A stretch of DNA of 64,000 nt. Origin: Octopus sinensis (taxonomy: Eukaryota). Where the stretch lies: NCBI RefSeq assembly GCF_006345805.1, contig NW_021832004.1, positions 1 through 64,000 on the forward strand, read 5' to 3'. Shown piece by piece: positions 5,574 through 62,365 of the stretch. Under the pieces are notes generated by a model. The model searched no databases and was not told the origin of the DNA. It saw nothing but the letters and a program-made list of their open reading frames with translations. The position numbers and the translations under genes are program-made. Positions within the stretch are counted from its first letter, which is position 1, and each line of letters opens with the position of its first letter.

Positions 5574-5639
<66 letters not shown>

Positions 5640-7039: not shown

Positions 7040-7330
7040 CAAACAGATCAAGTGCTAGAGCTAACAGACCGGACATAGTGGTGGTGGACCGCATATGCTA
7101 TATCGTTGATGCTGCATACTCCTTTGACTCACGAATAGTCAAGAAAGAAGGCGATAAAATAATAACATACAAACCCTTGTTAAGTACAAAAAAACTCGGT
7201 TATGGGAAATGAAGAAGGTGAAGTCCCAATTATTGTGGTGGGTGGGGTTGGGACATTTCAGAAGGCACCATGAGAGGTATAAAGACATTGGAAAAAGGGC
7301 ACAGTAGAACTGTAACAAAAGGTTTGTCTC
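7040..7330 (+). mobile_element. RLE (PD-(D/E)xK) endonuclease fragment of an R2/R4-type LINE (right-arm copy ~43,680-43,960, minus)
   Basis: Translates ANRPDIVVVDRICYIVDAAYSFDSRIVKKEGDKIITYKPL. Confidence 0.65.
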
Positions 7331-8655: not shown

Positions 8656-8703
<48 letters not shown>

Positions 8704-9283: not shown

Positions 9284-9543
9284 CGTCTCTATACTTGGTC
9301 GGCACAGATCTTCTCAACTGATAAAAATGGGTATTAGTTATTTTTATTAGCATCCTCTCTGTTGAGTCTTTCTTCGTATAAAATACAGCTTGGACTTATC
9401 GTTCTGCTCACGAAAGATTTACATGCAGAAGTTTCAAAACAACTCTTCGAACAGTGAAAGGCATCCAGGTCAAGTGTCATCAATGTATTACCGTCTTTCA
9501 GAGCACAGTTTGGTACTTTCATAAATATACTTCAGATATTCAA
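9284..9543 (-). pseudogene. PAN/Apple exon B, left copy, two 1-nt insertions (260 nt)
   Basis: Same acceptor (gttacag|) and donor (|gtaaac) as 41,448-41,705. It has an extra A in 'tatAtttatg' and in 'gaagaaAg' relative to the intact copy. This could be an assembly error. Confidence 0.75.
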
Positions 9544-13022: not shown

Positions 13023-13494
13023 TATATATCAAAGTTTTACCACAATAGAGGGAGGAAAAGAAATTGCATTACTTTTGATTATCCTTGTTGCTTATTTTGA
13101 TTTTAATCACCTTACTTTGAAATTGTATGGATAATAACCGTACTAAATTCTGGTCCCTCAACTTAAGTACCGTATTCATGTGAATCTAAATTTTACTGAA
13201 CTCATATATATATAAATTGTGTTCTTGTAGGGTCTCAGTCGTGATGGCTAAACTCTTAAAATTAAAAGCATATATTAATTATACAATAAAACATTTACAT
13301 ACAAATAATTTGAAGATAATTCCTCCTTAACATCCTGTCTGTTTCTAGGTAGAAATGGCTTTCAAGAACGAGATGTTACTTGTTTGAATTTATCCTCTTA
13401 ATGAAGTGTTTGTATCTATTCAATACACTTTATAAAGATACTCCGGGTGAAAAAGTATTGACTTAACGATTGAGATGGCATAAGATCACCAGAT

Positions 13495-39332: not shown

Positions 39333-41447
39333 TATGCATAAATGAATATACCTTTGGATGTATTTCCTTTGAGAGTTTTAATTCAAATTTCATTTTCTTG
39401 CAAATATATGAATATATTTTGTTTATTTTATTGGATCAGTTAATGTCTAGAGAATGTGTTGTGATACATTATTTCGTTGTGATTGTTTGCAGTGTGTGTT
39501 GTGTAAAATATAAACATTTTATTGGCCAGTGATTATATATGGAATGTTTTGCATGCAGAGAATGGAAAAATTTGAGATGGACGACTAAATTGAAAGTGGC
39601 TTGCGTACGATGTGGGCCGAGTTTAGTTGGATTATCTTTTGGATGGAGAATAACGTTGACATGGGATTTACGATTTTCTTCATATTTTTATCATACCTTG
39701 TGATTCAATTATTATTGATAGCGTTTTCATATTCATACATGCTTCCTGATCATTTTAAATTCATGAAACTTGAACATTTGCAGTTTCTACCCCTCTCACT
39801 GGAAATGCTTCGACAACAAAATAATTGAAATATCAATCAGAGTACAGATATCATTGTTTCATTCCTTGGCAAATTATTTTTGCACAGTTCTCCTTGATGT
39901 CTTTATCTGTCATTCCGCAGTTAATTGTGGTCGGGTCGTTATAATGGATTCTGTTTGATGTTTTATCATTTCTTATCCGTTCTTTTCTTCAAATTGCGAT
40001 CCATGGACATATATTCCTGTCTGGGAACATTATTGGTCTTGGCAAAGGAACGGATCACCGGAAAGGATGTGGTCAACTCTCTCATTATGTTTTTCGTTGT
40101 ATAATCTATGTTCCGCATACAGAAGTCAGTCCTAAAAAGTTCTCCAATAAGTACGTATTAGGCTACATTTCGCTGCGGATGTCTGATAAGACGAAAACAT
40201 GTCCGGATTTAACCCAAAACCTACTAAAAATTAGGTTCGTTCCCCACTGCTTACCTCTACATTATTTTTAATCAATTTCAATTTCAGAATTTCTCTCCCT
40301 TCCATCTCTTAACAACGGTCATCATTTAATCAGATAATTTCCCCCCTCTTCATTACATGCATAATTTCAATTAATTAAATATTCTTCTTGGTTCACTACA
40401 TTCACTCTTTATCCCGCTCTTAATATACGTAATACTTTCACTAAAGCCTCTGAAGTGTCTAGAATGTTCTATTCCAAGAAATACTGAGGCTTCCTATCTC
40501 GTTTGAAACTAATAGAATTTTTTTTTTATTTCTTCATCTCTCCCTTTTTCTATTTCTGCTCCTCTCTTTTTTTATCTCACCCTCACTCCTCCTATCACTC
40601 TCTCTTCTGTTCCCTCTCTTTCTATCCCTCTCCAATTTATCGCATTCCTTCATTATTTCAATGGATAATTTTATGGTGATGTAGTGGTGGTCATCGCCGT
40701 ATTTGTTACTGAATTATGCTTGTAGCACTTCTCTTTCTTATTCCTTTCATCTTTATTGTTTGTAAATTAATGTTAAACGCGAATATGAAATATGAAATTT
40801 TTTTACAAAATAATATGAAATAGGAAATTTTTTACAAAATTTTCGTTGCAGTTCTCTTCTACATCTCACTGACATTTGGAAATGGACGTAAGTAAATTTA
40901 TATCAATATATAGATATATATCTATGAAAATTATGAAAATCACTACTCAAAACTTTAATTTATAAGTTCAGTGGAAGAAAATATTTTCCTTTTCTAAGTA
41001 AATTAGATGAAAAGAAAACTCAAGATAAATCTCGTGTTATGACGAATTCAATTCTTAACATAATTTCCATTGGTGATAATTCAGTTTTCCGTCAGTTTGT
41101 AAGCATTTTGTTAAATAAAACAAAAAGTGCTGGTATTAGGGGACATTCTTTACAACAGACAACCGTTAAACATTATAGCATATAATATGTGAATCATTTA
41201 AATAATAGAATTAATTAAACAACATTTAAGACTCATTCGCAGTCATTTTCATTAAACAGATTATATATCCCAAGATGCTTTGTACCTACAATATGGTAGT
41301 AACAACTTTATTCACTTCTTCCTGGTAAAAATATCAATGCTGATCCTCAAACATTTAATATTCTCTATCTTTATTATTATCTATTTTCACAATGTTTTAT
41401 TTTCGTCTTCGTATTTTGGTTGTTTAATTTGCCTGGCTTTGTTACAG

Positions 41448-41705
41448 TTGAATATCTGAAGTATTTTATGAAAGTACAACACGCCGGTCTGAAAGATGCC
41501 AAAACATTGATGACATTTGACGTGGATGCCTTCAACTGTTCGAAGAGTTGTTTTGAAACTTCTGCATGTAAATCCTTCGTGAGCAGAACGATAAGTCCAA
41601 GCTGTATTTTATACGAAGAAGACTCAACAGAGAGGATGCTAATAAAAATAACTAATACCCATTTTTATCAGTTGAGAAGATCTGTGCCGACCAAGTATAG
41701 AGACG
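41448..41705 (+). CDS. PAN/Apple-domain cassette exon B, right copy, intact (258 nt, phase 1-1)
   Basis: Acceptor ctttgttacag|tt and donor gacg|gtaaac. Translates EYLKYFMKVQHAGLKDAKTLMTFDVDAFNCSKSCFETSACKSFVSRTISPSCILYEEDSTERMLIKITNTHFYQLRRSVPTKYRD. Confidence 0.82.
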
Positions 41706-42599
41706 GTAAACAAATTTGAATCTTTCTGTGTTTATTTCATTCCTTGACACTTGTATTCTATGTTTTAGTCCAATGAGAAACAATACGGTTAGCATTTAAA
41801 AATTGACTGCGATTTCTCTGGTCGATGTAGATAAGAGTGAGTTGAAAAATAATTGTTTGTAGAGTTTTCATTCCGGAGAGTTAAAGTTCTAATAAAGTTT
41901 TTAGTGATATGTTTAGCAGAAAATTTAGAAACGGATTGAGACACAAGATTACCGAGGAGGGAAGAGAAAATGTAAAGTTTTATAAGACCGTTTTGTCATG
42001 TGACTCTCAGAGAATATTCTCAATATATTTGATGATGAAAATAATGCATGTCTGGTGTGTAATATTTGTGTATGGATGACATCAGTTTGTGAGGGAGACG
42101 AAAAGGGATCTTATAAGAAAACAGAATATGATAAGAGTTTTTAAAATTACGCACAATAATTACACAAGATGCTTAACTGAATGTGTAAAACATATTTTGT
42201 TTTTTAAAATATAAATCAAAGAAAATGGGAAAAAAGTAGGGTAACTTACTCACAAATGAATGAAAACCCTCAAACTGGATCAAATCAGAATTGCCCACAA
42301 TCCTGAGTAACACTCTATATTCTCTCTCTCTCTCTCTCCCTTTTTCTATATCTCTTCTTCTCTTCTCTTCTCTCTCTCTCTCTTTCTTTCTCTTTCTCTC
42401 TCACTCATTCATTCTCTCTCCCCCTCCCCTCTCTTTCTTTTCAGTATCTGTCATTCATGTCCAGAGTGCCCCAGAAAGATTTACCCATGTGTAAACCTCT
42501 TCCTAAAGAATATCGGTTCAGGTAATATCTACATTTAACGTAAAGATTTGCTTATGTCTTTTGTTCATGTTTCTATTGTTTCGTTCGTCTAAAACTGGT

Positions 42600-43670
42600 T
42601 TGCAAACAAACATGGCGTCGAAAGTAAAAACATGACCAGATTGTCGCTTTGAGAGCAGCTAGAGTGAGCAACGATGACATAACAAAACGGTTGAATGTGC
42701 GTCGTAAACAGTGTTCAATACCTGGAAACAATATCTGGAGTCCACTACAACTTCTAGCAAGCCAATTCCTGGTAGGAACCGAGCAATTGAAATGTTGAAG
42801 CTGTGAAGAAACGAATGAACGGAAATCCCCGCAGGATGCAAGAAAAGCTGCAAAAGCTCTCTTAATATTTCGAAATCGTCAATGAACAGGATTTTTAAAG
42901 TGGATTTAAAACTTGCTGCAAAAAAGAAACAATCCAAGCGGTCAATTTCAGCAACATCCAAGAAGAAACGGCTCGACAGGGGTAAAACTATGTTAGCTGA
43001 GAAGAAGCGTGCCACTAACAAAGTGTTGATATGGTCTGATGAGAAACTATTCATCGCGGAGGCAGTTTCCAATAGAATGACAGGCTTTATGCATATAATG
43101 CAGGGGACTTGCCCGACGGTAACAGGATTCATATACGCCATCAGAAGACAGCTTCTCTCATAGTGTGGGTTACAGATGCATCAGATGGGTCCAAGTCTCC
43201 ATCGATCTTCATCGATTCTGGGCGTGAAGGATAACAGTAAAGTTTATTTTGAAATGTTGGATGAGATAGTGTTGCCCTGGATCACAGAAACAGTTGGTGA
43301 CCGTTACACCTTCACTCTAGACAGGGCTCCGGCCCACACATCCAATTTGATACAGAGGTGGTTTAAAGAGCATTTCAACGGTTTTGGAGATAAGAATATA
43401 TGGCCTCTCCTAAGTCTGGACGTCAATCCCATGGACTTTGCAATTTGGGGTGTCTGAGAGAGCAGTGTTTCTGCACGTTCCTATTCAAATGTGTCAGAGC
43501 TCAAGAGAGATCTTCTGTCTTTATGGGTCAATTTCTTAATTGCTTTTTTTTTCCCTTTCTGTACATATCATTATGTCTTCTTGGGCTTCTATATTTCTTA
43601 ACGCATCTTGGATTTCATTCAGCCACTCCGCTTCATCACTGAATATTTACCTGATTATCATGGCCTTGCC
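42600..43670 (+). mobile_element. Decayed Tc1/mariner transposase, DD37D/maT-like (left-arm copy ~7,350-8,410, minus)
   Basis: Motifs LIWSDEKLF, YTFTLDRAPAHT and WPLLSLDVNPMDFAIWG. Frameshifted, and TIRs were not found. Confidence 0.75.
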
Positions 43671-45365
43671 AAGGAGGAAAACCTTTTGTTAAAGTTCTAC
43701 TGTGCCCTTTTTCCGGTGTCTTTTATACCTCTCATGGTTCCTTCTGATAATGTCCCCAAGGATCCAGCAATAATTGGGACTATCTTCACCTTCTTCATTT
43801 CCCATAACCGAGGTTTTTCGTACTTAAGATGGTTGTATTTATTTATTTTATCGCCTTCCTACATGACTGTTCGTGAGTCAAAGGAATGTGGAGCATCAAC
43901 GATATAGCATATGCGGTTCACCACCACTATGTCCGGTCTGTTAGCTCTAGCACTTGATCTGTTTGGATTAAGAAATCCCACGTGATTTTGCTAGTCTCCG
44001 ACTCCACCACTCGAACAGGATAGCCAATCTCACCCAGAAATGGGTAGAGAAGAAATTGTCCCCGAAAGGTTGGGTGGAGGTGGCGCATGCATACATAGCT
44101 TCCCTCATCTATTATCACCTGACAGTAGTCCATTGCCCTGCTTTGAAACTGACCAAGCTAGAACGCTTAATATCCCGCCTTCTGTGGAAAGAACGTCTTC
44201 CCCTCGTCATACGGTTCATCTGCTATCAACAGCCACAGAGTGGAGGACTGGGCGTGCTGTGGCTAATGATGCACAGATGTGCGCTGAGGCTACAATATCT
44301 CCAGCATTTTCTTAACGTTGAACAGATGTGGTCACCGTGTGTCAAGTAGGATTTTCTGCTGCTCATCTCATTGACGGAGTTATAGTACTCAATCAAACGT
44401 AGACCCAGAAAGGACGCGTGGAACGTGGAGTGTCAGCAGCGCTCACAGCTTCCTGTCAGTCGGGCAGCGCGGTCAGAGGAAGTTCCACTGCGGTGTTCTA
44501 TAGGGGATTAGTAGCGGGTAAGAATCACGTCGTCCTTGTGGAAACTGGGCGACGGAAGGGATCAACTAACTGATCTTTTCCGGAGGACTATCAGGCCGAA
44601 TCGTATGGATAACTTCCAAAGTTCTATGGCCTGCCTGTGCTATCGGGGAGCTCTGCCGGCTCCAAACGATCTCTGCAGATACAAAAGTGCTGTCAGTCTG
44701 GTTTGTTCGAGGTGTGCGCAGAACGACAAAACCGTCCTGCACGCACTCATTCATTGTCTGAGCATTACTGACTAGTGCAGCTTTGTCAAACGGCTGTTAT
44801 CGCGTGTAGGACAGATCCGGTTATCATCTGAGTCCATCGTGAAGATCGCCACCCTCCTTCCTTCCTTCCTTTGGCCAGGAAGAAAAGACAGTTTTCCTCT
44901 GTCTGGTGGCTATGGTGAAGGCGGTGGACGAAACTGAGAGGACTGAAGGCGAATGCTTTCCTCTTGGGCCAACCCTCATCGACATTTTCAAGTTCCACTT
45001 AAAAAGGTAAGTGAGGGTAGAGAGGGAAGTTCTGCTCCCCAGTAAATTTGATGAAAGGTGGGTGTATGTGGTGAGGATGGTCCGAGTAAAGGGGCCTGCT
45101 CTGAACTTTCTTTTGTAAACCGGAGGGGTTGAGAAGGAGAGAGGCGCCTTCTGAGTAGCACTGGCGGTCGGAATAACCAGGTAGTGTGGGGGGTCTGCGG
45201 TTGTCCCTGTGAGGAGCTAACCCCTTTTGGGGAATTTTTATTGTTCAATTTCTTTTTGTTATTTATTTTCTGTTACTTATTGCATACACGGCATTGTTCA
45301 ACACCCCACTTGTCCATTTGTGTTGTATTGTCCCTATTTTTATAAGAAAGGTCCGATATAAAAAA

Positions 45366-45414
45366 GTATTACTATTATTACTATTATTATTATTACTATT
45401 ATTATTATTATTAC

Positions 45415-45467
<53 letters not shown>
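45366..45467. repeat. (TTA)n microsatellite
   Basis: Seen directly in the sequence. Confidence 0.97.
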
Positions 45468-45729
45468 GAAAACTCACAACTTATTTTGCTGGGTATGATG
45501 GAAAGTGTCAGCTGTCCACAAGCAGCGGACTAAGGTGACACATATTTACTGGTCATGCTTCACGAACCCTGCGAAAAATTCTTGTAGTTCCAAGCAATGG
45601 TGATATTTGTAGGCGTTCTACCTTCACACTTGCACCGATCTTTTTCAGCCATGTTGGTAGTTGAGTACTGATACTTCGAACTGCATCAATTACCCTGGGT
45701 ATCACGTCTACCCTCCTCATTAACCACAA

Positions 45730-45756
45730 CATTATTATTATTATTATTATTGTTGC

Positions 45757-45790
<34 letters not shown>

Positions 45791-45825
45791 ATAATAATAA
45801 TAACTATTATTATTATTATTATTAA

Positions 45826-45865
<40 letters not shown>

Positions 45866-45922
45866 TTTATCCTTATCATTCTTATTGCTATTGTTATTGT
45901 CGTTGTTGTTGTCGTTGACGAC
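45730..45922. repeat. (ATT)n/(GTT)n microsatellite
   Basis: Seen directly in the sequence. Confidence 0.97.
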
Positions 45923-46074
45923 GAGGTAAGACCTGTTTTGAACGCTCCGTCAGTTTGAATTTTTCTTGTGTATTTTTGAAGGTTGTTGACTGTTATGTAA
46001 GTGTTTTTGTTTTCTAAACCCCTATTGGTGTATAGAAGGGATTCTTTTCCACTAAGAGTTCTGACGGTCAGTAC

Positions 46075-46996
46075 CTATTTCTTTACTACCCACAAGGGGC
46101 TAAACACAGAGAGGAGAAACAAGGACAGACAAACAGATTCAGTCGATCATATCAACCCCAGTGCGTAACTGGCACTCAATTTATCGACCCCGAAAGGATG
46201 AAAGGCAAAGTCGACCTCGGCAGAATTTGAACTCAGAACGTAACCGCAGAAGAAATACTTATTTCTTTACTACCCACAAGGGGCTAAACATAGAGGAGAC
46301 AAACAAGGACAGACATAGGTATTAAGTCGATTACATCGACCTCAGTGCGTAACTGGTACTTAATTTATCGACCCCGAAAGGATGAAAGGCAAAGTTTACC
46401 TCGGCGGAATTTGAACCCACAACGTAACGGCGGACGAAATACCTATTTCTTTATTACCCACAAGGGGCTAAACATAGAGGGGACAAATAAGGACAGACAT
46501 AGGTATTAAATCGATTACATCGACCTCAGTGCGTAACTGGTACTCAATTTATCGACCCCGAAAGGATGAAAGGCAAAGTCGACCTCGGCGGGATTTGAAC
46601 TCAGAACGTAACCGCAGAAGAAATACCTATTTCTTTACTACCCACAAGGGGCTAAACATAGGTGGGACAAACAAGGACAGACATAAGTATCAAGTCGATT
46701 ACATCGACCTCAGTGCGTAACTGGTACTTAATTTATCGACCCCGAAAGGATGAAAGGCAAAGTTTACCTCGGCGGAATTTGAACCCACAACGTAACGGCG
46801 GACGAAATACCTATTTTTTTATTACCCGCAAGGGGCTAAACATAGAGGGGACAAACAAGGACAGACATAGGTATTAAGTCGATTACATCGACCTCAGTGC
46901 GTAACTGGTACTCAATTTATCGACCCCGAAAGGATGAAAGGCAAAGTCGACCTCGGCGGGATTTGAACTCAGAACGAAATACGGCAGACGAAATAC
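46075..46996 (-). mobile_element. Five tandem SINE bodies (184,184,184,184,186 bp); the head lies at 52,117-52,177 beyond Tx1-B
   Basis: Junctions at 46,258, 46,442, 46,626, 46,810 and 46,996. Outer TSD at 46,059-46,074 and 52,178-52,193 (2 mismatches). Confidence 0.9.
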
Positions 46997-49900
46997 GAAT
47001 TTCTTTATTGCCCACCGGGGGCCAAACATAGATATGGACAGTACAACTGATGGGATCAGGGAATCGATATGATTTTACATAAATGTGACATTAAAAATAA
47101 AATACAATACATAAAAATCGAATGGAATACACAGTACAAAAACAATACAAATGAAGCGATGATCAAGTTACGCTCCGATCGCACAAGCCCCGATCTACCG
47201 CTGATACCTTTTTATTTTTCCTTTTTTTTTTTTTTTTTCCTCGTCTATTCACACGGTTCCTTGCATGCACAACACTCGTGCAACATACTTCCATCTCTTT
47301 TGGAACGTACACTCTGACAGACACCTCTTCTCCAGCCACAGTTTCCTTTTCAAATGAAAAGAAAAAAAGGATCGTAAATTGTCACCAGAGATAAAGTTGC
47401 CTGTCTTAATTCCTTTAATCCTAGTCTTCCATACAGCCTCTTTTGCTATTGCTACAACCGTGAGAAAACAATTCTTACCTTCGTTCGTTAGAACTCCCGG
47501 TGGGTCAATTTTTATAATTGACTCAGTCGACAGCCGTACTCTTCCTTCGCCGGACAACAGATGTTCAGCATAAGCCCACATTTCAGTTATCTCCGGACAC
47601 TGAACAATAGCGTGAGGGACGGTTTCCCTGTCCCCCCCCGCATCTTGGACAGGTCGGCGACTGACGTTTACCATGTCTTGCGAGCTTATCCCAAACGGGC
47701 AAGGCACCTCTGTAGCATTGCCAGGTTAAGGACTTTTGGAAGTTGTCCAACGTTCTCAACCCGAATGTACGATGAAACAAGCTGTCCAGTTGAATAAATC
47801 CGAGACCTAGAGTCGACCCCAGGCCATCGTCGCATTCAGACTCTACCAACCCACTATATAAAATCCGTGTGGAACCCTCACCGCTGGCGTTGCCCGAGCG
47901 CCGGAACAGCAAGAGGGCCTTACGGCACTCTTTATGCCACTCACTCGACCTCGGTCTACGAGAACACCAGGCTTCCTGTTCGCAAAAACTCTTGAACTCA
48001 GGGAACATTTGTCTGGCCAGCGGAGACCACACCCGTTCACTATCCAGGAGAATCCAGAGGTGCCTCAACCTCAACGCATGTCTGCGCATCATTAACCAAG
48101 GCATCCCTAAACCTCCATTTAAAGGCTTTTGACAGCAGACAGAGCGTTTCACAAGTGGAGACCTGCCCTTCCACAAAAAGCGAAAGAGCTGTCTCTCCAA
48201 CCAACAACACTGTCTGAAGGCATCGACTTGCCAACCCAGGTGCCGAGCTGCAAGCCGACCGACTTTTCCTGGTTAATCTTTGCTCCTGCTACCTCCTCGT
48301 AAGCCTCAATAGTCTTACCTACTTCACGTAGGCGTGCCACTGTGGTTACACTGATAGTGATATCATCCGCGAAAGCCGTAAAAAACTCCTCTAGTCCTGG
48401 TTCTCTCGGGATGCCACTCAACCTTTGCAGTAATGGCTCGAGAGCCATCACATACAAAAGTGGTGAAAGCGGACATCCTTGACGAACCGAGCGTCTGATG
48501 CAGAACGGCTTCGAAAGGAAACCGTTCACCCGAACTATCGAGTCAATGTTGTGGTACAAAGCGATAAACCACCTGAGGAAGCCAAGGCCCAGGCCAAACC
48601 GCGCAATTACAGTCGCTAGGTATCGATGGTCAACCCTATCAAAAGCTTTAGACTGGTCCAAATGCACCAATGCCCCACCTTTGCCAGATTTATTACCAAA
48701 CCTCTCTATGGTATAGCGAATAAGATGGAGGGTATCCTGAATGGTTCTGCCTGGGATGGCACATGTCTGTGCCTCCCCGACTATACCATTCGCGACACGC
48801 GCCAACCTTTTTGCTAGAACCTTGACCAAAATCTTCACTTCTGCGTTTAACAGAGTGATGGGCCTGAAATTCTCTAGAACGTCCCCCTTGTCCGGGTCCT
48901 TTCTGACCAACGTCACTACTCCCCGGCGCACAGATCTGGGGATAAACCCATTCTGTTTCCAGTTCGCGTACACGTCAGTCAGTAGTTGCCCGAACAAGTC
49001 TGGCATACATTTATACAGCTCGTACGGAAGACCATCAAGTCCCGGTGACTTACCCGCTTTACAATCGGCCAAAGCCTCCATCACCTCCTCAGGTGTGATT
49101 GGCCCTTCGCAAGACTCCGCATCCGACCCCGAGAGGCACGGCAGCCCTGTAAGAAAGTCCTCGAGGGCTCTCCCACTACCAGGACCGCCGTCACCCCCGA
49201 ACAGCTGGGCGAAGTACTCCCGAAAGACCTCACACATTTTCTCGGGTTCGTTTATCAAGACACCATTTTGATTCGTCAAAGACCGAATAGAGGAACTATT
49301 TCCTTGCCGAGCTTCCACCACTCGGGCCCATCCAGCGGCTTTGATTCCTTCACTTCCCATTGCACGTAACTTAGCTCTGGTAATACTTCCCATGTGGTGG
49401 GCTTCAAGATGCTGGTTTAACTCCAGTCTTTTCACCCTCGCTTGGTCTGTATTACCAGTCCTCCAGGCTTCTTCTAGTTCCTTAACTAGACCATCTCCTA
49501 TTTTACGTCCCTTCTTAGCTAAACTTATGCTAAACCTAATAGACTCATATTTGATGGCTCTTTTTAGGGCGTGCCACCATTTGTTATTAATGATGGTACC
49601 TGTTAATGCCCTCTGTATTAACATCTTGATCCGCTTTCTGTACTCCTCAATCGCCAAAAGGGACGTATTGAGTTTCCAGTAGCCAGATCCCTGTCTATGC
49701 AACTTATCTACCGTCAGTTTACAGGTAACCATCTTGTGGTCACTGTAGCTGACTAGAAAAAACTGTGGACACTCAACTATGGACTTATCTTTTTCTCTAA
49801 TTAAAATCCTATCTAGATATGTTCTGGTAGACCCGTCACTATTTGACCACGTCCACTGTGGAGTGTTCGAGTGCTCCAACCTATATGGATCTGCTAGCTG

Positions 49901-52116
49901 AAATTGACTTAGCAGATCCCGAAAGCCTGGGTTACATTTTCTGTTCATGTTCGAGTTTGAGCCAACACAATCTGTGTGTGCTGCACATATTGTATTAGAG
50001 TCTCCTAACACTACTAGTGAATGCGACGTGGCTAGGAACTTTCCTAGGCCACGAAAATATTCAGTTTGCGGGCCAATAATGTTTGGTGCGTAAATAGCGA
50101 CCAGCCTGATTGTCTTGCCACAACTGAATGTCAAGTCGAGAACGACCAGCCTGCCTTCTGGGTCAGAAAAAAAACAACTTTTTCTCGGCTACCCGGTTTC
50201 TTTTTAGTAGGACCAACACCCCACCCCCACCTCCCGCCCGACTCGGAGAAACGTATTTCTCGTAGCCGTTCAGGAGGGGGAGCAGATCTCTTGGCCCCTT
50301 CACCCGGGTTTCCGTTGCAACAATTACATCCAAATTTCTCCACCTGATGTCATTCAGAAAGCGTCCTTGCTTCCAGCTTGACAACAGGCCATGAACATTT
50401 AAACAACCAATGTGAATAGCCATCACTTACCTGTTTAATTAGGATTGTCGGGTGGAGGGGGACCCTCCACCTTTTTTTGATCCAGGGTCGGAGGTGGACG
50501 GTCTTGGGAAATAGATTTGTCAAAATCCCGTCTCACCACCGACACAGAATTATCAGGTGGAGGGGGAATCTCCACCTTTTCCTTTCTCGCGGGATCGGAG
50601 CTGGTAATCCCTGAAATATCGACTTGTTAAAATCTAATCTCAATGAAGATACAGTCTTTCTGTACTTATTTGTAGAATTCTATAAGTCTTATTTGAGACT
50701 TCATATATGTCGTATTGATAAATTCCTCTGAAAGGTTATCAATTTTTTTTACAGTCTTTATGAGTTGAATGTCTCTCATGAGCTCAGTATCTTTAGTGTA
50801 TACGGCTATTATGCCTTTTTCTTCTTTTTCTCTTCTGGCAGTCTTTTTGGTCGTTGTTCTGTAGTAGTCGCCGCTCTCAGTTGAGTTGCTGGTAGTTTCC
50901 TTTGTTTGTTGTTTTTTCTCATCTGTTTCTTCTTTTTCATCTTCCTCTTTGTCTTTTTTCTCTCCTTCCTCCTCTTCCTCATTTTCCTTGCAGTTCCTTC
51001 GAATGTGGCCTAATTGACTACATAAAAAACATCGAGATTTTCGGCTCTCAAAAACACCACGAGGTTCTCCTCCCCTACCTCAATTGTCTCGGGAATTGCT
51101 TGAATTATTTTAGGGTCCGCTTGAATAAGGAGATTAATGTTTTGACCATCCCAGTGTGTGTTTTCGGTAGCGGTAGCCTGGAGGAGAGTAATTTTTTCTT
51201 CCTCTTTGATCAGGACTGCCGCCAACAACCACATAGGGTCCACTTCCGTGGGACCATTGTAATTTTATTCTGGACGTTCTCATCCCATATATAGGAGATA
51301 AGCTCCACGTCGTTGGTTTTCAGCGTTTCTACTGAGTTCTTTTGTGCTATTTCTTATTGGTGAACCTTACTTCCACCGTTCCGAATTTCTTGCCTCTTCT
51401 CAGATAAACTATGTCGTCCCATATTGGCTTTAAGCACTTTTCTATTTCTCTTCTGACATTCTTTCATTTTTTTCTTTTTTGTAGACAATATGTTTTGAAA
51501 ATTAAAGTTTTTTGGTTTTTTTCTTGTAATAACTTTTCCGGAGGTTCAATTTTCACAACGTTGTCAGTTATTTTCATCATTTGGCTATATTTCATAAAGT
51601 CGCTCTTATTCGTCGACAGCAGCCAGATTCCACTCCCAGCTGCCAACGCAAAACATTTTTTCCCATTTTTGGTTCTGTCTGGATGCTAGGCACATCAATT
51701 ACTCTTTTCGACACAGTGCCTTTGTTCTCTGGCAAAGTCGGAAACTCTTCTGGTGATAGTTCTGACGAGCTTTCAGACACATCTCCAAAAAAATCAAATA
51801 TATTATCTATTCTGCTATTCTTTCTTGTAGCGAGGGAAACCCTTATTTCCCTGTCTGTAGTTGGCTCCTCGCCGGACATGTATTTCCTCCTCTCAACAGG
51901 AGAAACAAGTATTCTGCTCCAACGGCAGGCTCTATGCTAGACGACATTCTTCCCCCTAAAGGGGGAATGAACAACGCGTGCTACTACAAGCACTAAGTGT
52001 TTTCAAATAAAAACTCCAACAGTTAAGTTATTCAACAGTTTAACAAGAAAAACACAGTTATTAACAATATTAACACCAAGAAGAAACAGCAACTTTTACC
52101 ACGAACACATGTGTGA
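46997..52116 (-). mobile_element. Full-length Tx1/L1-clade LINE 'Tx1-B' (5,120 bp) inserted inside the SINE
   Basis: ORF1 pieces lie at ~51,947-50,900 with the CCHC knuckle CFLCSQLGHIRRNC. ORF2 runs from 50,426 (GCLNVHGL...ETRV, APE), through a 661-aa EN+RT segment (RQGCPLSP, FADD), to a C-terminal CPRC...H...C. It has a few frameshifts. The 12-bp TSD is at 46,985-46,996 and 52,117-52,128. Confidence 0.92.
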
Positions 52117-53099
52117 CAGACTAAATACGGCTACGCATTTCGCCCGGCGTGCTAACGTTTCTGCCAGCTCGCTGCCATTCTGACGCCCAGTACCTCAACG
52201 ATTTATCTTCTGAACAGCACAAAGAACAGTACCAACACCACTAACTGCACCGGCACCACCATTAACACTGAAAAAGAAAAAAGTCAAGAAAACACCGCTG
52301 TGAACAAGAAAAACAACGAAGAAAATACAAACACAAACGCAAATGACAGATCCAATAGACACGGTTTCGCTTCTGCAGCGAAACAAACAAGAGAAACGAT
52401 AAACGTCACATTAGAGGATTTAAAAAATTTCAAGGGGCTCTTAGTGAGACAAGGTAATAATGTCTCTCTAATACCCCGAAAGAAATTGTTCTGGACACAA
52501 ACAGAAGAAGCATTACGTACAAATGTATAAACAAACAAAAAAAGTCATTGGAACGAGCAACACAAGAATAACTGGAACTAATTCTGAAACCAATTTGGAA
52601 GAAGAAAACATAAGTGACACGTGGAAAATGGTTCGGTACTGTGGAAGTGCGCTACGCAAAGGAAGAAGCAAGAAAACATTCCACAGTGCCACTATTTTCA
52701 GAGACCTTATCGTCGTGCCGACATGTCTTGGTCGGCATGTTAACAAAATTAATATCGGCCGGGGGGGGGAGTACCCCTGAATTAAACATATGTTGGCTGA
52801 TGGCCGCTGTCTTCTATGATATAGAGGATACGGCCGCGATCCTGGAGGTGTATAAGTTGCACCGACAAAATTGGACGGGTCAGGAGTTGGAACGCTTGTC
52901 CAAATGGAACAAGAGGACCTCAAGTCTATCCCTGACTCCTTAAACTCACCGAAGAGCACGAGACTACGCGTAGCTGTGGAGGGCAGGAGGCCGAGGTGCT
53001 ACTTTCGTGGAAACAATCAGCACCTTAACATCGACTGCCAAAATACAAGGAGATGCGTCGAACGCTACAACCGACACCAGAAAAAGGGACATCTCCTAA

Positions 53100-53130
<31 letters not shown>

Positions 53131-56100
53131 CGGAGTACCCCCCCCCACCCCCGCCACCGGCCGGGGTACCACTACCCCGTCGCAGCAGTAACACCACCAC
53201 CACAACTACTGTAGCAGTAGCAGCAGTAACAAATGAACACCAACAAAACCAAAAGTCGGAGTCATCCTCCTCCCGACCAAAACAACTCGGACTGTTCGAG
53301 TAACGAAGTCGAGAGGGGGGGGGGTGGCAAACAGTTTCCCCCCCCACCAAAGAGAAAAAAAGAAAAATCTACTGAGACAGTAGAAGAAAAAGTGGGGAGG
53401 CGCTAGTAGACACTGAACGTCCCAACAGCGGCAACACCACACTCAACAGCCATAACAAACAACACACCTCCACCAGCACTATCACCTCAAACACAAACTC
53501 CACCACAGATTCTACTAGCACCACAAACTTCACAGCTATTGATACAGGCAATAATAGATTTAATTACATACTCAAGAGACAATACAAACACCACCATGAC
53601 AGAACTCACCACCACCACCACCACCACCACCACGCATACAAATATTAAAAACCACACAACAAATTTACAAACCATAAAAGCAACATTTCCAGATGCTGTG
53701 GGGTGGCTCCAAAAGACTTTTACAAAAAGAATATATAAAAACCTAGGGAAACATCCACATGAAGTGTACCATCATACCAGAGGACAGTGGTAAGAGGTGC
53801 TCTTCTCCATTCTATAGTTATTTTAACTTGGTGATGCTAAGAATAGTTTTATAGAGGCCAGGGGCCTCGGGTCACCTTGGAAACAACGTCAGCTTTTAAA
53901 TGACCTGAGGTCACTTACTGTAAATGTTGCAGTCATTAGTGAATCCAGATATCCGACCCACGGAGATTTTTCTTTCTCCGTGTCGGCCTGGGTGGTGTAA
54001 TAGTAAAACTGTGGTGCTTTTCTGGAAGGGTCCGGATTTGAATATAAGGGCAGTCTTCCTGGATCAGAAGGTAAGTTGGTGGTCCTAGATGTCAACAGCA
54101 GTGACGGCTGGGCTTTCAAACTGGTGGCTGACAGGGGCAGGGTGGTCTGATTACTTCAAGCGTCTGGAGTACGTCTCGAACATTCGTACTAGTAGGGGAT
54201 TAGAACGCTGTCTTAGATGGATGTTTCGATTGCGTGGGAGTTTCTTATAAGAGATGTGGGGTGCAAAAACCTCAAAAATCTACTCAGACGTTTTTCCATT
54301 GTCTGCCGGGTACCGACTAGATTATCCGAATGTCCCAATGTGGACTTGAACAACCGCATCTGGTTATCTAGATCGTATCTAGATAGAGTATTGTGTAAGC
54401 CAGCGGACAGGATATCATCGGGTGTTCATAATTTCACATGGTCAACTACACAGACCACAAATTTGTGATCTGTACAGTCGACTTGGATAGGCTTCATAGA
54501 CATGGTCCCGGTTACTGGAAGCCGAAGGTGACGTGTCAAGCTTACAGTGACCGGATTAGCGAATTAGTTAAGCGGACGTTGTCGGGGGCAATCGTCAACA
54601 ACTGTTGGTTTGCTTTTAAAAGAGCAAATTAGAGAAGAAGAATTAATTAGGTTTAGCAAGGCGTTGACGATAGGACGAATAGAATAGAGGGAGATGCATC
54701 GGAACTGACGTGTTGGCGGTGAGGTTGACCCATGACCAATATTTCGACACCAAACACGAAAGCCGCGGAGAGGGAATGATAGCGTAATGATAGGCCCGCG
54801 TGACGGAGGTGAAAAGTGACAATAAAGGCACCATTCGGTCTTTGGTGGACCAGGAAGGACACATGGTGTTCGAACCGAAAGAGACGGGCCATTAAATTGC
54901 ATTGCTCGGAATCTAGTTTGGTCCAGACCTTCAGGCGCAGAAAAAACTGGGACGAGGTGACGAGGAAGGTAGCCAGCCTTACACAGACATGGGCCTATAG
55001 GGAGCTGCTTCAGAGCGGTCGAGGCGAGGAGGCGAATGTGTACATCGCATCTGTCATCGATTACCACTTGACCGTCGTCCCTTGCCCCGTTTGCTGGTTG
55101 ACCAACCTGGTGCGTTTACTCTTCCCTTTTCTGTGGAAGGGGCGCGTTCCACTGGTCAGGCGCTCCATCAACTGTCAACAGTCGCTGAATGAAGGGCTGG
55201 GCATGCCGTGGTTACTAATTCGCAGACATTCATTAAGTTTGCGGCATCTCTAGCGTTTCCTTGGCGGTGAGCAGGTGTGGTCACTGTTTGTCAGATACAT
55301 TTTTCCACAGACCGTCCCTTTGACTGAGCTGCAAACCTGGATTAAGCGTAGACCGAAGAGGGAGTGCTTGTCACAGCCCTCCGCCAGGCGAACAATGAAG
55401 TCGGTGTAGTTTCACTCTAGCGTTCTATAGAGGGCTAGTGGAAGGATATCGCGACGACGTTCTCAAGGAAACTCTAGGCATCGATGAAGATCAACGAAAT
55501 GGTCTGTTTCGGAGAACTTTCTGGCCTAGGCCTATGAATAAGTTCGAGAAGTCCCTTGCCTGACAGTGCCACCGAGGGGCGCTGACTGTTTGAGATAAAC
55601 TTTACAGGTACGGAAGTGCCGTCAGCCAGGCCTGCTCGAGGTGTGCCCAGAATGAGGAAACCGTTCTACACGCCCTTGTTCAGTGACCGAATATTGCTGA
55701 CCTCTGTGGGTTTATGTCGAACACCTGCTGTCACGTGTTGGACGGATCCGCTATCAGCTGAATCCATAGTGAGGATTACCCTACCGTCCTCCTTTGGCTG
55801 GGAGGAGCAGGCAATTTTTATTTGTTTAGTGGCTGTAGCGAAATCGGTAGTATGGTGGACTCGTCTGAAAGGGCTAAAGTCAGAGACCTTCCTCTTTGGC
55901 CAAGCCCTTACCAACTTTTTCAAGTTTCATTTGAAATGGAATTTGGGGGTGGAGAGGGAAGTGTTGCCTTGTAGTAATTGTGTTGAAAGGAGGGTGAATG
56001 TTGGAAGAATGTCCAGTGCAAAAAGACCAATTCTTTGCGCGCACCTGTAAACAATAAAAGGGATTTAAAGAAGGCCTCTTGCTCTGTTGATCAGGCACCC

Positions 56101-56289
56101 GTGGCCTTTGTGGGGTTTTCCACGAGGATCTTAAGCGCCTCCCCTATTAGGTGTTTTTTTATTTGTTTGATTTACTTGCTATATATATTGTTTACACGCC
56201 GTAAAACCCATTGTATCTTCCCGTTTTTGTCTGTTATGTTGTTGCATGTCATTCAATGTTATTTTATGTGAGTGATCATGGCTAATAAA

Positions 56290-56334
56290 ATAATTTATTA
56301 CTATTATTATTATCATTATTATTATTGTTATTGC

Positions 56335-56389
<55 letters not shown>

Positions 56390-56400
56390 TATTATTATTA
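56290..56400. repeat. (ATT)n microsatellite
   Basis: Seen directly in the sequence. Confidence 0.97.
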
Positions 56401-56582
56401 TCCTCACTTTTATCATCACAATATTATCACAATATTGATATTTATTAAAGAGTAGAAAATAATCTATTAATTATTTCTCATTATTCAAAAATAATAACAC
56501 TATACAACGTGAAACAGTTCCACCACCATTACGAAAAACAACAAAAGACAACAGTGATTTATTTATTTTCTTCTTCTTACAG

Positions 56583-56812
56583 GAAGATGTCCTTTAGATT
56601 TTATTGAAAAGCTGCTATACCTTCTCACAATGATTTGGGTGACTTTAAAGACTTCAGTTACACGCAATGTCTGCTTCATTGCGAAGCAAAAGCAAAATGC
56701 CAATCGTTTGACTATCACTATAATGACAAAAAATGCCACTTGTCATCTAAAGATCATAGAACTGTTGAATTGTATTTTTACAAAAATTACATTTACACCG
56801 AAATAAACAGAG
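56583..56812 (+). pseudogene. PAN/Apple exon A, right copy, 1-nt deletion in an A-run (230 nt)
   Basis: Splice sites are intact. 'attgaaaagct' has one base fewer than left 'attgacaaagcc'. The downstream frame reads DLGDFKDFSYTQCLLHCEAKAKCQSFDYHYNDKKCHLSSKDHRTVELYFYKNYIYTEINR. This could be a homopolymer error. Confidence 0.75.
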
Positions 56813-57001
56813 GTAAGGGCGTCATTTTCTTGTTTTTATTTATTTATTTTGTTGGAATTATACACAGTCAGTTGGACAAGACTAAGGCACCACCTTCAAA
56901 AATGTGTTAGTCTGTTATATTGAGGTTGGGTCTTTGATTTACTTGGCTCTATCGATTGGCTAAGTCCAATGTCATATAAAGGTACGGACTCAATACCAAA
57001 T

Positions 57002-57046
57002 TAGATAGATAGATAGAAAGATAGATAGATAGATAGACAGATCGAT

Positions 57047-57078
<32 letters not shown>

Positions 57079-57200
57079 CAGATACATACATACATACATA
57101 CATACATACATACATACATACATACATTCATACATACATACATACTCGCATACATATATAGATGCACGCATACATGCATACTTACATGCACGCACACACT
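57002..57200. repeat. (TAGA)n/(TACA)n microsatellite
   Basis: Seen directly in the sequence. Confidence 0.95.
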
Positions 57201-60460: not shown

Positions 60461-62174
60461 ATTGCAGACAACATATTAAAATTAATTCCGATCTATTCTA
60501 CACGCTTCCCTGAACTGTTCCAGAAAAAATCATTTTTTCCAACTCCAATGCGGACTAATTATATTGTAAGACATATACCCCGGACTCCTTAACAAGAATC
60601 GAAACCTCGGTCTTCACGCTTGTTATATTGTTTCCTTGCCATTTGTGTTAGAATCCATTCGTTTTACCTATTTAATTCGCCACCATTTTAGATGAGACAG
60701 AGTGTAATCTTGTTAATCCATTCCGATCTATTGTCAATGGTCTGACTTGACTTTAGCACTGCAATAAATTCGAGATACCAAGAGAAAAATGTTCTCTTTC
60801 CTTTGCAACTTCCAAACAGTTAACTATGGCACCTTCTCGCGAGCTTTGCCCCATTTACCCACCTCAAGTTAGGGTTCACTATTAACAACTGCCATGGTAA
60901 TAGATTATCCATAAAAACTAACTAAATTTTGTGTTTACTTCCCATTCGTCGCACTTGCAGAACCGCGTAAGTAAAATCTACAGTAAGTGTGAAATACCTT
61001 TCAGCAGTTCTTTGCAGTGCATCCAGAAATATTATCTACGCATTGCACAGTCTTTCGCCAACTTGTCACATCTCTACGTGTTACAAACAACTTGCTACAT
61101 CGTGCCTGTTACGCTTTTCCCGTTACAATTATACCGTTATACATATAAAGACATGTTTGAAGTACATTTCGAACGTAGCTAGGATCTTTATAAACGTATG
61201 TCCCTTCATATCTGAGGCCTTGTGTTATTACTAGAAATAACTGATAGTAAATAAAACTCAACATATATTAAAGAAGTAATGACTTCTTATATAAAATTAT
61301 CTTATATATAAATAGGTAACTCGATTGTATTAAGGAGATTAGGATTTCTTTATTAATATTAAAGAAACCACGAAAGATATTAAGACCATCAGAAGAATAA
61401 GAAACTATTTTATTCCATTTCAGAACTTTGGAACGATTTCAAACAGTCAAATACACTGGACAAGATTAACTCTGTGGGATGTGGTATATATTTTTCGACT
61501 CTAATTATTTCGTTGACAGTAAGACCCTATTTTTGTTTATTTTTTGTGTTTTTCGTTTCTGTTTCTGGTTTCTCATCTTTAATTCATTGATCTCTAGTTT
61601 TGCCACAAAAAATTAAAAAATAAATAAATATCTCTTTCTTCTACATCACATGAGTATTTCTACTTAGAAACTTAATTCTTAATTAAATATATTAACAGTA
61701 AAATTATTATATCCATCCAAAAGAATGTTGTAAAACAACCCACAAATACATTTAAAATCTGGCAAATGGATTAATATTAATCTCCGTTGTCATTAAAATT
61801 CTCAACACGCTTCCTTACTAATCTGCAAGAAATACCTCAATACATCTCGCCGGTAATACGAGAACCACTCCCTCCGAGACACCCAACAACATTCTCATTC
61901 TCATTCTCCCGTCATACATGCTATTTCACCAGCCAGATCCCACATCAATTATTATCCCCAGTCCTTCCTTTCTAGATTATACAACACTCACGAACTCACT
62001 CCCTACTCACACTAACCTAAAGATGTCCAAACGGAACATGAATAAAATCGATCTATCGAATCAATAGGCCACATCTATTCGTTTCCCTTGTACTTTGTCA
62101 GACTAGAGCAATAATTTAATTTATGCTCTTATATTTATTGTGTTTCCTCTTTCCAATTTTTCTTTCTCTTGCAG

Positions 62175-62365
62175 AAAAAGAAACTAATGATTTGACAGCT
62201 TATTCAACATTTTCCTTCAAACAAAATCCAAATCTCTACCTTATAACCGAGGCCCAAATGGATGCTCACTCGGTTCTGGATTGTTCCCGTTTATGTATGA
62301 TATCTTCTACATGTACTGCCTTTTCATATACTAACACTAAGTGCCTACTAAAGAAACTGATCTGA
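62175..62365 (+). CDS. PAN/Apple terminal exon C1 (phase-1 acceptor to TGA)
   Basis: Acceptor ttctcttgcag|aa. Translates KETNDLTAYSTFSFKQNPNLYLITEAQMDAHSVLDCSRLCMISSTCTAFSYTNTKCLLKKLI*. AATAAA at 62,811. Confidence 0.75.

What the first reader, a model, noticed from the sequence alone, without database searches (positions are those of the whole stretch)
56583..56812. Exon A paralogs diverge faster than their introns, almost entirely at amino-acid-changing sites
Seen (manual count against 406-636): 39 substitutions in 230 nt (~17%), 27 codons changed in amino acid and only 3 purely synonymous codons. All five Cys and the QSFDY, SKDH and YTEINR motifs are unchanged. Adjacent intron differs by about 7 substitutions in ~195 nt downstream and about 11 in ~110 nt upstream. 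Inference: diversifying selection on a binding surface, as in gamete-recognition, immune or toxin proteins. Neutral decay after the frameshift would not exceed the intron rate or spare the cysteines.
Basis: partly seen in the sequence, partly recalled or inferred. Interest (0 to 1): 0.78.

Follow-up and report, generated by a model that had tools for sequence, protein, structure and literature searches.

The report
Hypervariable PAN-domain exon in duplicated octopus gene
The two exon copies encode the variable middle domain of an uncharacterised octopus family of small secreted PAN/Apple-domain proteins; their extra divergence is real, but it seems to come from gene-conversion patchwork together with family-wide selection for variation, and this one pair of (probably dead) copies does not prove such selection.

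Summary
The counts are right: 38 substitutions plus one 1-nt deletion, 26 amino-acid-changing codons, 3 synonymous-only codons, five Cys intact. Exon A is the most divergent 230-nt stretch of a 10-kb inverted duplication (16.5% against 6.0%).

The N/S split is what random mutation gives. Thirty-eight random hits yield about 26 changed and 6 silent codons. Omega is 1.2 (NG86) or 1.8 (ML, CI 0.6-6.6), not above 1.

The high-divergence block runs past the exon into the upstream intron (10.6%; exon versus that intron p=0.19). Only the downstream intron is very similar (2.7%).

The arms are a mosaic. In the neighbouring PAN1 exon a 70-nt patch groups each arm with a different paralog elsewhere, which marks gene conversion.

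Exon A encodes PAN2 of an octopod-only family of secreted triple-PAN proteins (window = Octopus sinensis VCDQ01003122.1). Family-wide, PAN2 is far more diverged than PAN1 and PAN3, at synonymous sites too.

My site models find about 21% of PAN2 codons with omega near 4 (M1a/M2a LRT 29.7, M7/M8 33.4). The arm differences concentrate at those codons (p=0.005).

Both window copies carry frameshifts.

Verdict: observation real, interpretation partly supported, confounded by conversion.

The parts
56583..56812 (+). Exon A, arm-2 copy. It is coding exon 4 (second PAN/Apple domain, PAN2), 230 nt, with a 1-nt deletion near 56608 that shifts the frame.
   Evidence: ag/gt boundaries and alignment. Pfam PAN_1 40.2 bits.
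406..636 (-). Exon A, arm-1 copy. PAN2 exon, 231 nt, phase 1-1, open frame.
   Evidence: Pfam PAN_1 32.8 bits. AF2 pLDDT 91.5 with PAN/Apple fold hits.
56407..56792 (.). High-divergence block of arm 2 (equivalent to arm 1 426-805): 62/378 = 16.4% against 3.9% in the surrounding 1 kb. It covers the exon core and the upstream intron. The 5' limit lies in an (ATT)n zone and is imprecise.
   Evidence: Change-point scan, 2*dlnL = 55.8; 100-column bins.
121..10530 (.). Arm 1 of the inverted duplication.
   Evidence: blastn chain against 57096-40424, 87-92% identity including gaps; 6.2% mismatches over 9,310 columns.
40424..57096 (.). Arm 2 of the inverted duplication. It carries an extra insertion of about 5 kb (47.0-52.1 kb) with a LINE RT ORF.
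41448..41705 (+). PAN1 exon (coding exon 3), arm 2, open frame.
9284..9543 (-). PAN1 exon, arm 1, with two separate 1-nt insertions (frame broken).
41471..41540 (+). 70-nt cassette patch in PAN1 with 14 differences between the arms. It is flanked by 168- and 194-nt runs of perfect identity. The arm-2 type matches P0068 and the arm-1 type matches P0071.
   Evidence: 11 informative sites support (arm2,P68)|(arm1,P71). All 19 arm-defining flank informative sites support (arm1,arm2)|(P71,P68); 3 columns in an indel-adjacent stretch just past the exon show the third pattern.
40852..40887 (+). Coding exon 2 (second half of the signal peptide), arm 2. The arm-1 equivalent is 10102-10137 (-).
13303..13333 (-). 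Coding exon 1 (ATG, MLRRNYLQII) of the arm-1 gene, outside the repeat arm. No counterpart was found upstream of arm 2.
61424..61518 (+). Coding exon 5 (linker, ELWNDF...). It is 95 nt, with a 1-nt deletion relative to three relatives (96 nt).
62175..62365 (+). Terminal PAN3 exon (ends in a stop). A tandem duplicate lies at 62939-63129.

Best explanation
Exon A is the PAN2 exon of two inverted paralogs of an octopod-specific family of small (about 280 aa) secreted proteins. Each protein has a signal peptide and three PAN/Apple domains. PAN2 is the family's hypervariable module.

The two copies differ more than their surroundings for two reasons acting together.

(1) History. The family evolves by concerted evolution with short-tract gene conversion, so the 10-kb arms are a patchwork of young (0-4%) and old (12-20%) blocks. 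A block of about 380 nt covers the exon core and the upstream intron. It either escaped arm-to-arm homogenisation or was imported from another PAN2 lineage. That makes the three relatives arm 1, arm 2 and P0066 roughly equidistant inside the exon.

(2) Selection regime. Inside PAN2, about 30% of codons (Cys and scaffold residues) are conserved. About 20% take replacements faster than silent changes across the family, and the arm differences fall preferentially on these codons.

The pairwise N/S counts add nothing beyond neutrality. Both window copies now look non-functional, if the frameshifts are not assembly errors.

Shown: the counts, the block structure, conversion in PAN1, the family-level rates and the PAN fold.
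Inferred: that the exon A block has the same origin as the PAN1 patch, and that the fast codons form a binding surface.
For: Identity and family:
- The window equals O. sinensis GCA_006345805.1 VCDQ01003122.1:1-64000.
- There are 16 family proteins, all from Octopus or Argonauta and all unnamed.
- PAN fold.

Mosaic:
- Dispersion index 3.06.
- Block at 56407-56792.
- PAN1 patch with 11 informative sites against 0 for the arm grouping, and the reverse in the flanks.
- Domain trees disagree: P12 pairs with P67 in PAN1 but with P65 in PAN2 and PAN3.

History rather than rate:
- For the same gene pairs the median dS is 0.755 in PAN2, 0.141 in PAN1 and 0.248 in PAN3.
- In the N-terminal half of exon A pS is 21.6% and pN 17.1%.
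- In the exon core the three possible groupings of arm 1, arm 2 and P0066 get equal support. Distances are 38, 41 and 48.
- In other pairs the exon does not outrun its introns.

Selection:
- Site-model LRTs of 29.7, 33.4 and 27.9; 23.6 without the window copies; 42 for the C-terminal half on its own tree. Null simulations reached at most 21.5.
- Enrichment of arm differences at selected codons, p=0.005.
- No stop codons and five intact Cys, joint p=0.010.

Decay:
- Frameshifts in exons 3, 4 and 5 and no exon 1 for arm 2.
- Replacements at family-conserved sites in both copies.
Against: - No donor sequence for the exon A block was found in the eight loci I could fetch, so conversion at exon A is inferred by analogy with PAN1.
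- Synonymous sites are few (about 43), so 'synonymous divergence is also raised' rests on p=0.04-0.08.
- The exon core (20.6%) still exceeds the upstream intron (10.6%) at p=0.036.
- In the C-terminal half silent divergence is low, which fits real acceleration better than old ancestry.
- The site models are my own implementation on NJ trees of 7-10 short sequences. Simulated recombination inflated false positives to 25% at the nominal 5% level.
Confidence: 0.55

Rival explanations
1. After a single duplication about 6% ago, diversifying selection on a PAN2 binding surface drove replacements in both copies. The introns are a valid neutral yardstick, and conversion plays no role at exon A.
For: - pN of 17.4% against an arm background of 6.0% (p about 1e-8).
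- Differences by codon position are 13/17/8.
- In the C-terminal half pN is 17.8%, pS 6.4% and the downstream intron 2.7%. The ML LRT against omega=1 for that half is 8.6.
- Family-level site tests and the enrichment at selected codons.
- Cys and reading frame preserved, p=0.010.
Against: - Whole-exon omega is not above 1 (p=0.31-0.38).
- The count-based test for the C-terminal half gives p=0.15.
- The N-terminal half has pS 21.6%, above pN.
- The elevated block extends into the upstream intron.
- Conversion is shown in the same arms.
- Other family pairs under the same regime show exon divergence at or below intron divergence.
- Both copies carry frameshifts.
Confidence: 0.25
2. Neutral decay of two pseudogenes inside a locally old or fast-mutating block. 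There is no selection on these copies at all.
For: - Omega is indistinguishable from 1.
- The N/S codon counts match a random scatter.
- Frameshifts in exons 3, 4 and 5 and no exon 1 for arm 2.
- Seven replacements fall at codons that are conserved in the family, spread over both copies.
Against: - No stop codon and all five Cys intact has joint p=0.010 under random scatter.
- Replacements are non-random and enriched at the family's fast codons (p=0.005), with fewer at conserved codons (p=0.054).
- Splice sites are intact in both copies.
Confidence: 0.15
3. Artefact: a mis-assembled inverted repeat or a bad alignment on an unplaced long-read scaffold.
For: - The scaffold is unplaced.
- There are four single-base indels in coding exons, several of them in A/T runs.
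Against: - The arms differ by 6% plus many indels, and a 5-kb LINE insertion is present in one arm only.
- The exon aligns without ambiguity, with one gap.
- P0066 supplies an independent third copy with the same exon structure.
Confidence: 0.05

Closest known systems
PAN/Apple domain (Pfam PF00024 PAN_1): plasminogen N-terminal domain, HGF N domain, factor XI/prekallikrein apple domains
   Same: The HMM hit is above the gathering score. The four core Cys are invariant in 13 sequences. The AF2 model has pLDDT 91.5 and a beta-beta-alpha-beta-beta-beta order, with Foldseek TM 0.75-0.80 to plasminogen and HGF N domains.
   Different: Here the domains make up a tiny stand-alone secreted protein of three PAN modules with no protease, kringle or other partner domain. 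Sequence identity to these proteins is only 14-20%.
Apicomplexan Apple-domain lectins: Sarcocystis muris SML-2 (2yil/2yio) and Toxoplasma MIC4 (4a5v, 2ll3)
   Same: These are the best matches to solved structures by sequence (E=6e-5 and 3e-4) and the highest identity among fold matches (25%, TM 0.71). They too are small secreted proteins built only of tandem Apple domains. The PDB titles record SML-2 in complex with a galactose analogue, so a lectin-like role is a reasonable lead.
   Different: They come from a different kingdom and there is no evidence of common descent beyond the domain. Sugar binding was not tested here and binding residues were not compared.
Multigene families shaped by both diversifying selection and short-tract gene conversion (MHC class I/II and similar; from my own knowledge, not tested here)
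   Same: There is a hypervariable patch within an otherwise homogenised gene. Cassette types are shared between loci in conflict with their flanks. A codon class with omega>1 exists. Pseudogene copies sit in the cluster.
   Different: The fold is unrelated. No function, polymorphism or expression data exist. Donor-recipient relations were seen only for PAN1, not for exon A.
Leech anti-platelet protein (1i8n), a salivary PAN-domain protein
   Same: It is a single small secreted invertebrate PAN module (Foldseek TM 0.66).
   Different: The match is weak (E=0.027, 13% identity), and nothing here points to salivary expression.

Membership tests
PAN/Apple domain (PF00024) | Profile HMM match above Pfam's gathering score | tested here: met
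   32.8 and 40.2 bits against a cut-off of 21.4 for the two exon A translations. 58.8-73 bits for full-length relatives.
PAN/Apple domain (PF00024) | Conserved core cysteines forming the disulfide scaffold | tested here: met
   C29, C33, C39 and C51 are invariant and C2 nearly invariant in 13 sequences. All five are identical in both arms. Disulfide pairing itself was not tested.
PAN/Apple domain (PF00024) | Hairpin-loop fold (strands packed on one helix) | tested here: met
   AF2 pLDDT 91.5 and pTM 0.80. The top 34 Foldseek PDB hits are PAN/Apple domains, TM 0.70-0.80.
Gene under diversifying (positive) selection | Pairwise dN/dS significantly above 1 for the two exon A copies | tested here: not met
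   NG86 omega 1.22, Fisher p=0.38. ML omega 1.77, CI 0.61-6.59, LRT p=0.31.
Gene under diversifying (positive) selection | Site models: a codon class with omega>1 (M1a/M2a, M7/M8) | tested here: met
   PAN2: LRT 29.7, 33.4 and 27.9, with 21-23% of codons at omega about 4. It exceeds all 60 null simulations. Caveats: my own implementation, 9 sequences, and recombination inflates the test.
Gene under diversifying (positive) selection | Nonsynonymous rate above a valid local neutral rate | tested here: inconclusive
   pN of 17.4% exceeds the arm background of 6% and the downstream intron of 2.7%. Against the upstream intron (10.6%) the whole exon is not significant (p=0.19). The yardstick itself is a conversion mosaic.
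Gene under diversifying (positive) selection | Variable sites cluster on an exposed surface | tested here: inconclusive
   Fast codons fall at i/i+4 on the helix (28, 32), i/i+2 on a strand (50, 52) and in the 45-48 hairpin and 61-69 loop. No coordinates were available to measure exposure.
Concerted evolution / gene-conversion mosaic | Adjacent segments with conflicting phylogenies | tested here: met
   PAN1 patch: 11 sites support (arm2,P68)|(arm1,P71). Flanks: all 19 arm-defining informative sites support (arm1,arm2); 3 indel-adjacent columns show the third pattern. Domain trees disagree.
Concerted evolution / gene-conversion mosaic | Identified donor for the exon A block | tested here: not met
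   No PAN2 exon in the window or in L001-L008 is closer to either arm's core than P0066, which is equidistant. The whole genome could not be searched.
Unprocessed pseudogene | Disrupted reading frame or missing essential exons | tested here: met
   Arm-2 gene: a 1-nt deletion in exon 4, a 1-nt deletion in exon 5, and no exon 1 in the window. Arm-1 gene: two 1-nt insertions in exon 3. No protein model for either copy was returned. Assembly error is not excluded.

The most novel reading that the evidence does not exclude
Octopods may carry a lineage-specific, germline-encoded repertoire of small secreted triple-PAN, lectin-like recognition proteins. The middle domain would be kept diverse by positive selection, and short hypervariable cassettes would be shuffled between loci by gene conversion. 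Frameshifted cluster members such as the two in this window would then serve as cassette reservoirs. That would be a molluscan analogue of pseudogene-templated diversification, built on an Apple-domain scaffold.
Probability: 0.15. Interest if true: 0.7.

Novelty: new member of a known kind. Interest (0 to 1): 0.42.

Why it matters
The family is unnamed and I found no paper on it. It is restricted to octopods in a search of 5.8 billion proteins.

It combines a well-understood binding fold with a hypervariable middle domain, evidence for positive selection, and cassette-like exchange between paralogs. That pattern is typical of recognition molecules in immunity, gamete or prey interaction. It makes the family a concrete candidate for a cephalopod-specific recognition system.

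The case is also a methodological warning. In multigene clusters, 'exon more divergent than intron' and a raw count of replacement against silent codons are not evidence of selection. Random mutation gives the same counts, and conversion distorts the intron yardstick.

Tried and rejected
- A word-indexed protein search with the 76-aa exon peptide found nothing. The index-free HMMER scan was needed to find the family.
- A search for further PAN exons in the window by phmmer found only PAN1, PAN2 and PAN3 of the known copies.
- I looked for a conversion donor for exon A in the window and eight fetched loci and found none.
- Polarising the differences with P0066 gave 20 arm-2-derived against 13 arm-1-derived changes, so there is no significant asymmetry.
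- Four-taxon informative sites in the exon core were uninformative: about 4-5 sites for each grouping.
- CpG mutability was rejected as a cause by inspection, since there are few CpGs in the exon.
- The ML result of 'omega = infinity' for the C-terminal half (LRT 8.6) was not taken at face value, because the count-based test on the same codons gives p=0.15.
- The full-length AF2 model was too poor to use (pLDDT 52.7); only the single-domain model was used.
- P0064 could not be located on a contig.
- The Pro/Thr-rich ORF at 3157-3510 (-) was considered as an exon. I set it aside because no family protein contains such a segment.

Full report
**What is there.**
The window is AT-rich eukaryotic DNA with microsatellites and LINE reverse-transcriptase ORFs. 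Its last 5.5 kb is 100% identical, at identical coordinates, to locus L002. The window is therefore Octopus sinensis GCA_006345805.1, unplaced scaffold VCDQ01003122.1, bases 1-64000.

The two regions in the finding are in opposite orientation. They belong to a large inverted duplication: arm 1 is 121-10530 and arm 2 is 57096-40424, with a 30-kb spacer. Over 9,310 aligned columns the arms differ at 6.2% of sites, or 5.97% outside exon A.

**The observation.**
Window 56583-56812 (+) and 406-636 (-) are ag|...|gt-bounded exons. The copy at 406-636 is 231 nt and phase 1-1.
- I count 38 substitutions plus one 1-nt deletion in the 56583 copy.
- 26 codons change the amino acid, one more is hit by the frameshift, and 3 are synonymous-only.
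- All five Cys and the QSFDY, SKDH and YTEINR motifs are unchanged.
- The downstream intron differs at 5/183 sites and the upstream intron at 12/113.
- The exon is the most divergent 230-column window of the whole arm alignment (p=1e-8 against background).

**Do the counts mean selection?**
Only about 19% of sites in these AT-rich codons are synonymous.
- NG86 gives Sd 6.25/42.8 and Nd 31.75/182.2, so dS 0.162, dN 0.198 and omega 1.22 (Fisher p=0.38).
- My GY94 pairwise ML gives omega 1.7-1.8 under three frequency models, with LRT against omega=1 at p about 0.31. The 95% profile interval is 0.61-6.59.
- Dropping 38 substitutions at random on the exon yields 26.2 +/- 2.4 changed codons and 5.9 silent ones, with P(<=3 silent)=0.14.

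The headline '27 against 3' is therefore the neutral expectation. What random scatter does not give easily is an exon with no stop codon and all five Cys untouched (joint p=0.010). Some purifying filter acted during the divergence.

**Is the exon really faster than its introns?**
Divergence along the arms is strongly overdispersed (index 3.06; 100-column bins range from 0 to 25 mismatches).
- A change-point scan of the outer 1.4 kb finds one high block, arm 2 56407-56792 (arm 1 426-805). It has 16.4% divergence against 3.9% outside (2*dlnL=55.8).
- The block begins 20 nt inside the 3' end of the exon and continues about 175 nt into the upstream intron. Its far edge lies in an (ATT)n tract and is imprecise.
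- The whole exon against the 113-nt upstream intron is 16.5% vs 10.6% (p=0.19).
- The exon core against that intron is 20.6% vs 10.6% (p=0.036).
- The upstream intron against the downstream intron is 10.6% vs 2.7% (p=0.008).

**The gene and its family.**
The exon encodes a PAN_1 domain. An index-free HMMER scan and a profile search recovered 16 relatives. All come from O. sinensis, O. bimaculoides, O. vulgaris or Argonauta hians, and all are 'uncharacterized' or 'Apple domain-containing'.

The complete members (for example P0012, 276 aa) consist of a signal peptide, PAN1, PAN2, a short linker and PAN3. Mapping them onto the window gives six coding exons:

| Coding exon | Arm-1 gene (-) | Arm-2 gene (+) | State |
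|---|---|---|---|
| E1 (ATG) | 13303-13333 | none found | missing for arm 2 |
| E2 (signal peptide) | 10102-10137 | 40852-40887 | both present |
| E3 (PAN1) | 9284-9543 | 41448-41705 | arm 1 has two 1-nt insertions |
| E4 (PAN2, exon A) | 406-636 | 56583-56812 | arm 2 has a 1-nt deletion |
| E5 (linker) | off window | 61424-61518 | 1-nt deletion against three relatives |
| E6 (PAN3) | off window | 62175-62365 | tandem duplicate at 62939-63129 |

No protein model for either copy was returned. Both copies look like unprocessed pseudogenes, unless the indels are assembly errors on this unplaced long-read scaffold. I masked the broken codons and did not mend them.

An AF2 model of the arm-1 PAN2 domain is confident (pLDDT 91.5). 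It matches plasminogen and HGF N domains, the Sarcocystis lectin SML-2, MIC4 and factor XI apple domains. By sequence the nearest solved structures are SML-2 and MIC4. I found no paper on the family.

**Direct evidence for conversion in the same arms.**
In the PAN1 exon the arms differ at 14 of 70 positions (41471-41540). This patch is flanked by the longest and third-longest runs of perfect identity in the whole alignment, 194 and 168 nt.

I made a four-way alignment with the next gene on the scaffold (P0071, L002) and a chromosomal paralog (P0068, L003).
- All 11 informative sites in the patch group arm 2 with P0068 and arm 1 with P0071.
- All 19 arm-defining informative sites in the flanks group the two arms together; 3 columns in an indel-adjacent stretch just past the exon show the third pattern.
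- Five of the 15 exon differences are synonymous (omega about 0.5).

This patch is a shared cassette, not new mutation.

**Family-wide rates.**
I extracted PAN1, PAN2 and PAN3 exons from eight loci. For the same seven genes:

| Domain | Median dN | Median dS |
|---|---|---|
| PAN1 | 0.129 | 0.141 |
| PAN2 | 0.454 | 0.755 |
| PAN3 | 0.095 | 0.248 |

- PAN2 is thus three to five times more diverged at silent sites too. This points to PAN1 and PAN3 being homogenised while PAN2 lineages stay old.
- In eight other pairs PAN2 exon divergence (13-34%) is no higher than at least one of its flanking introns, and nowhere exceeds both by more than about 1 percentage point.
- For the tandem PAN3 duplicate the exon (6.8%) is less diverged than its upstream flank (12.3%).
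- With P0066 as a third copy, the exon distances are 38 (arm1-arm2), 41 and 48. All three groupings get equal support in the exon core, whereas the flanks group the arms.

**Family-level selection tests.**
I wrote a codon-likelihood program (GY94, F3x4, NJ trees, all branch lengths optimised).
- PAN2, nine sequences: M0 omega 0.92. M1a against M2a gives LRT 29.7 (p=4e-7), with 21% of codons at omega 4.2. M7/M8 gives 33.4 and M8a/M8 27.9.
- Without the window copies the LRT is 23.6. The arm1/arm2 replacements are then enriched in the independently defined positive class (10/15 against 16/60, p=0.005), with 7 of 31 at conserved codons.
- The signal sits in the C-terminal half (LRT 42 on its own tree; N-terminal half 5.4).
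- PAN1 gives LRT 12.1 and PAN3 is not significant.
- Null simulations behave as expected without recombination (maximum 9.0 in 16). Complete reshuffling of two or three segments inflates the test (maxima 14.9 and 21.5; 25% of the 28 three-segment replicates exceed 5.99). None of 60 replicates reached the observed value.

**Splitting exon A.**

| Half of exon A | pS | pN | Comparable intron |
|---|---|---|---|
| N-terminal | 21.6% | 17.1% | upstream intron (10.6%) |
| C-terminal | 6.4% | 17.8% | downstream intron (2.7%) |

This fits old ancestry at the 5' side and true replacement excess at the 3' side. The tests disagree, though: Fisher gives p=0.15 and the ML LRT is 8.6. The halves do not differ significantly in silent changes.

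**Conclusion.**
The most likely account combines three things:
- a conversion-made block mosaic;
- a family-wide regime in which the PAN2 surface is free, or driven, to change;
- probable loss of function in both window copies.

It is not demonstrated by this pair.

Noticed in passing
window 41471-41540 (+) and about 9450-9520 (-): A two-type cassette in the PAN1 exon (QHAGLKDAK..N against PNCALKDGN..H) is shared with paralogs P0068 and P0071 in conflict with the flanks. PAN1 as a whole has family omega about 1.2 and M1a/M2a LRT 12.1.
   Followed up: yes
window 62175-62365 and 62939-63129: Tandem duplication (764-nt period) of the terminal PAN3 exon. The exon differs at 6.8% and the upstream flank at 12.3%, the opposite pattern to exon A. 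It is unclear which copy, if either, is spliced.
   Followed up: partly
window 61424-61518: The linker exon (ELWNDF...) is 95 nt against 96 nt in three relatives, so it is a second frameshift in the arm-2-side gene.
   Followed up: partly
window 9170-15204 and L002 7591-14520: The 5' region of the arm-1 gene, including exon 1 at 13303-13333, is 90-92% identical to the 5' region of the next gene on the scaffold (LOC118761175, just beyond the window). Homology runs well past the inverted-repeat boundary, so the scaffold holds at least three copies.
   Followed up: partly
window 47000-52117, ORF 48149-50134 (-); also 36261-38426 (+): LINE-type reverse-transcriptase ORFs (RVT_1). The first sits in an insertion of about 5 kb present only in arm 2, so it post-dates the duplication.
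   Followed up: partly
window 4281-5012, 22653-23205, 46072-47107: Arrays of a 184-nt satellite (86-92% identity between copies). They occur in both arms and once in the spacer.
   Followed up: no
window 3254-3469 (ORF 3157-3510, -): A 36-nt minisatellite whose minus strand reads as a Pro/Thr-rich repeat (TPTPPPPALS...). It lies in the intron between PAN1 and PAN2, and no family protein contains it.
   Followed up: no
window 30255-31613 (+): A 452-aa open reading frame in the spacer with no Pfam match. Its origin is unknown.
   Followed up: no
L004, L005, L007 (PAN1, PAN2, PAN3 trees): Domain trees disagree. O. bimaculoides P0012 pairs with P0067 in PAN1 but with O. sinensis P0065 in PAN2 and PAN3. 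Its PAN1 dS to P0065 (0.30) is double its PAN2 dS (0.15). This suggests exon-scale exchange after speciation.
   Followed up: partly
window 1-215 and 57000-57130: The outer ends of both arms run into (TATC)n/(TACA)n microsatellites, so the true outer limit of the duplication cannot be read. Arm 1 may continue off the window.
   Followed up: no
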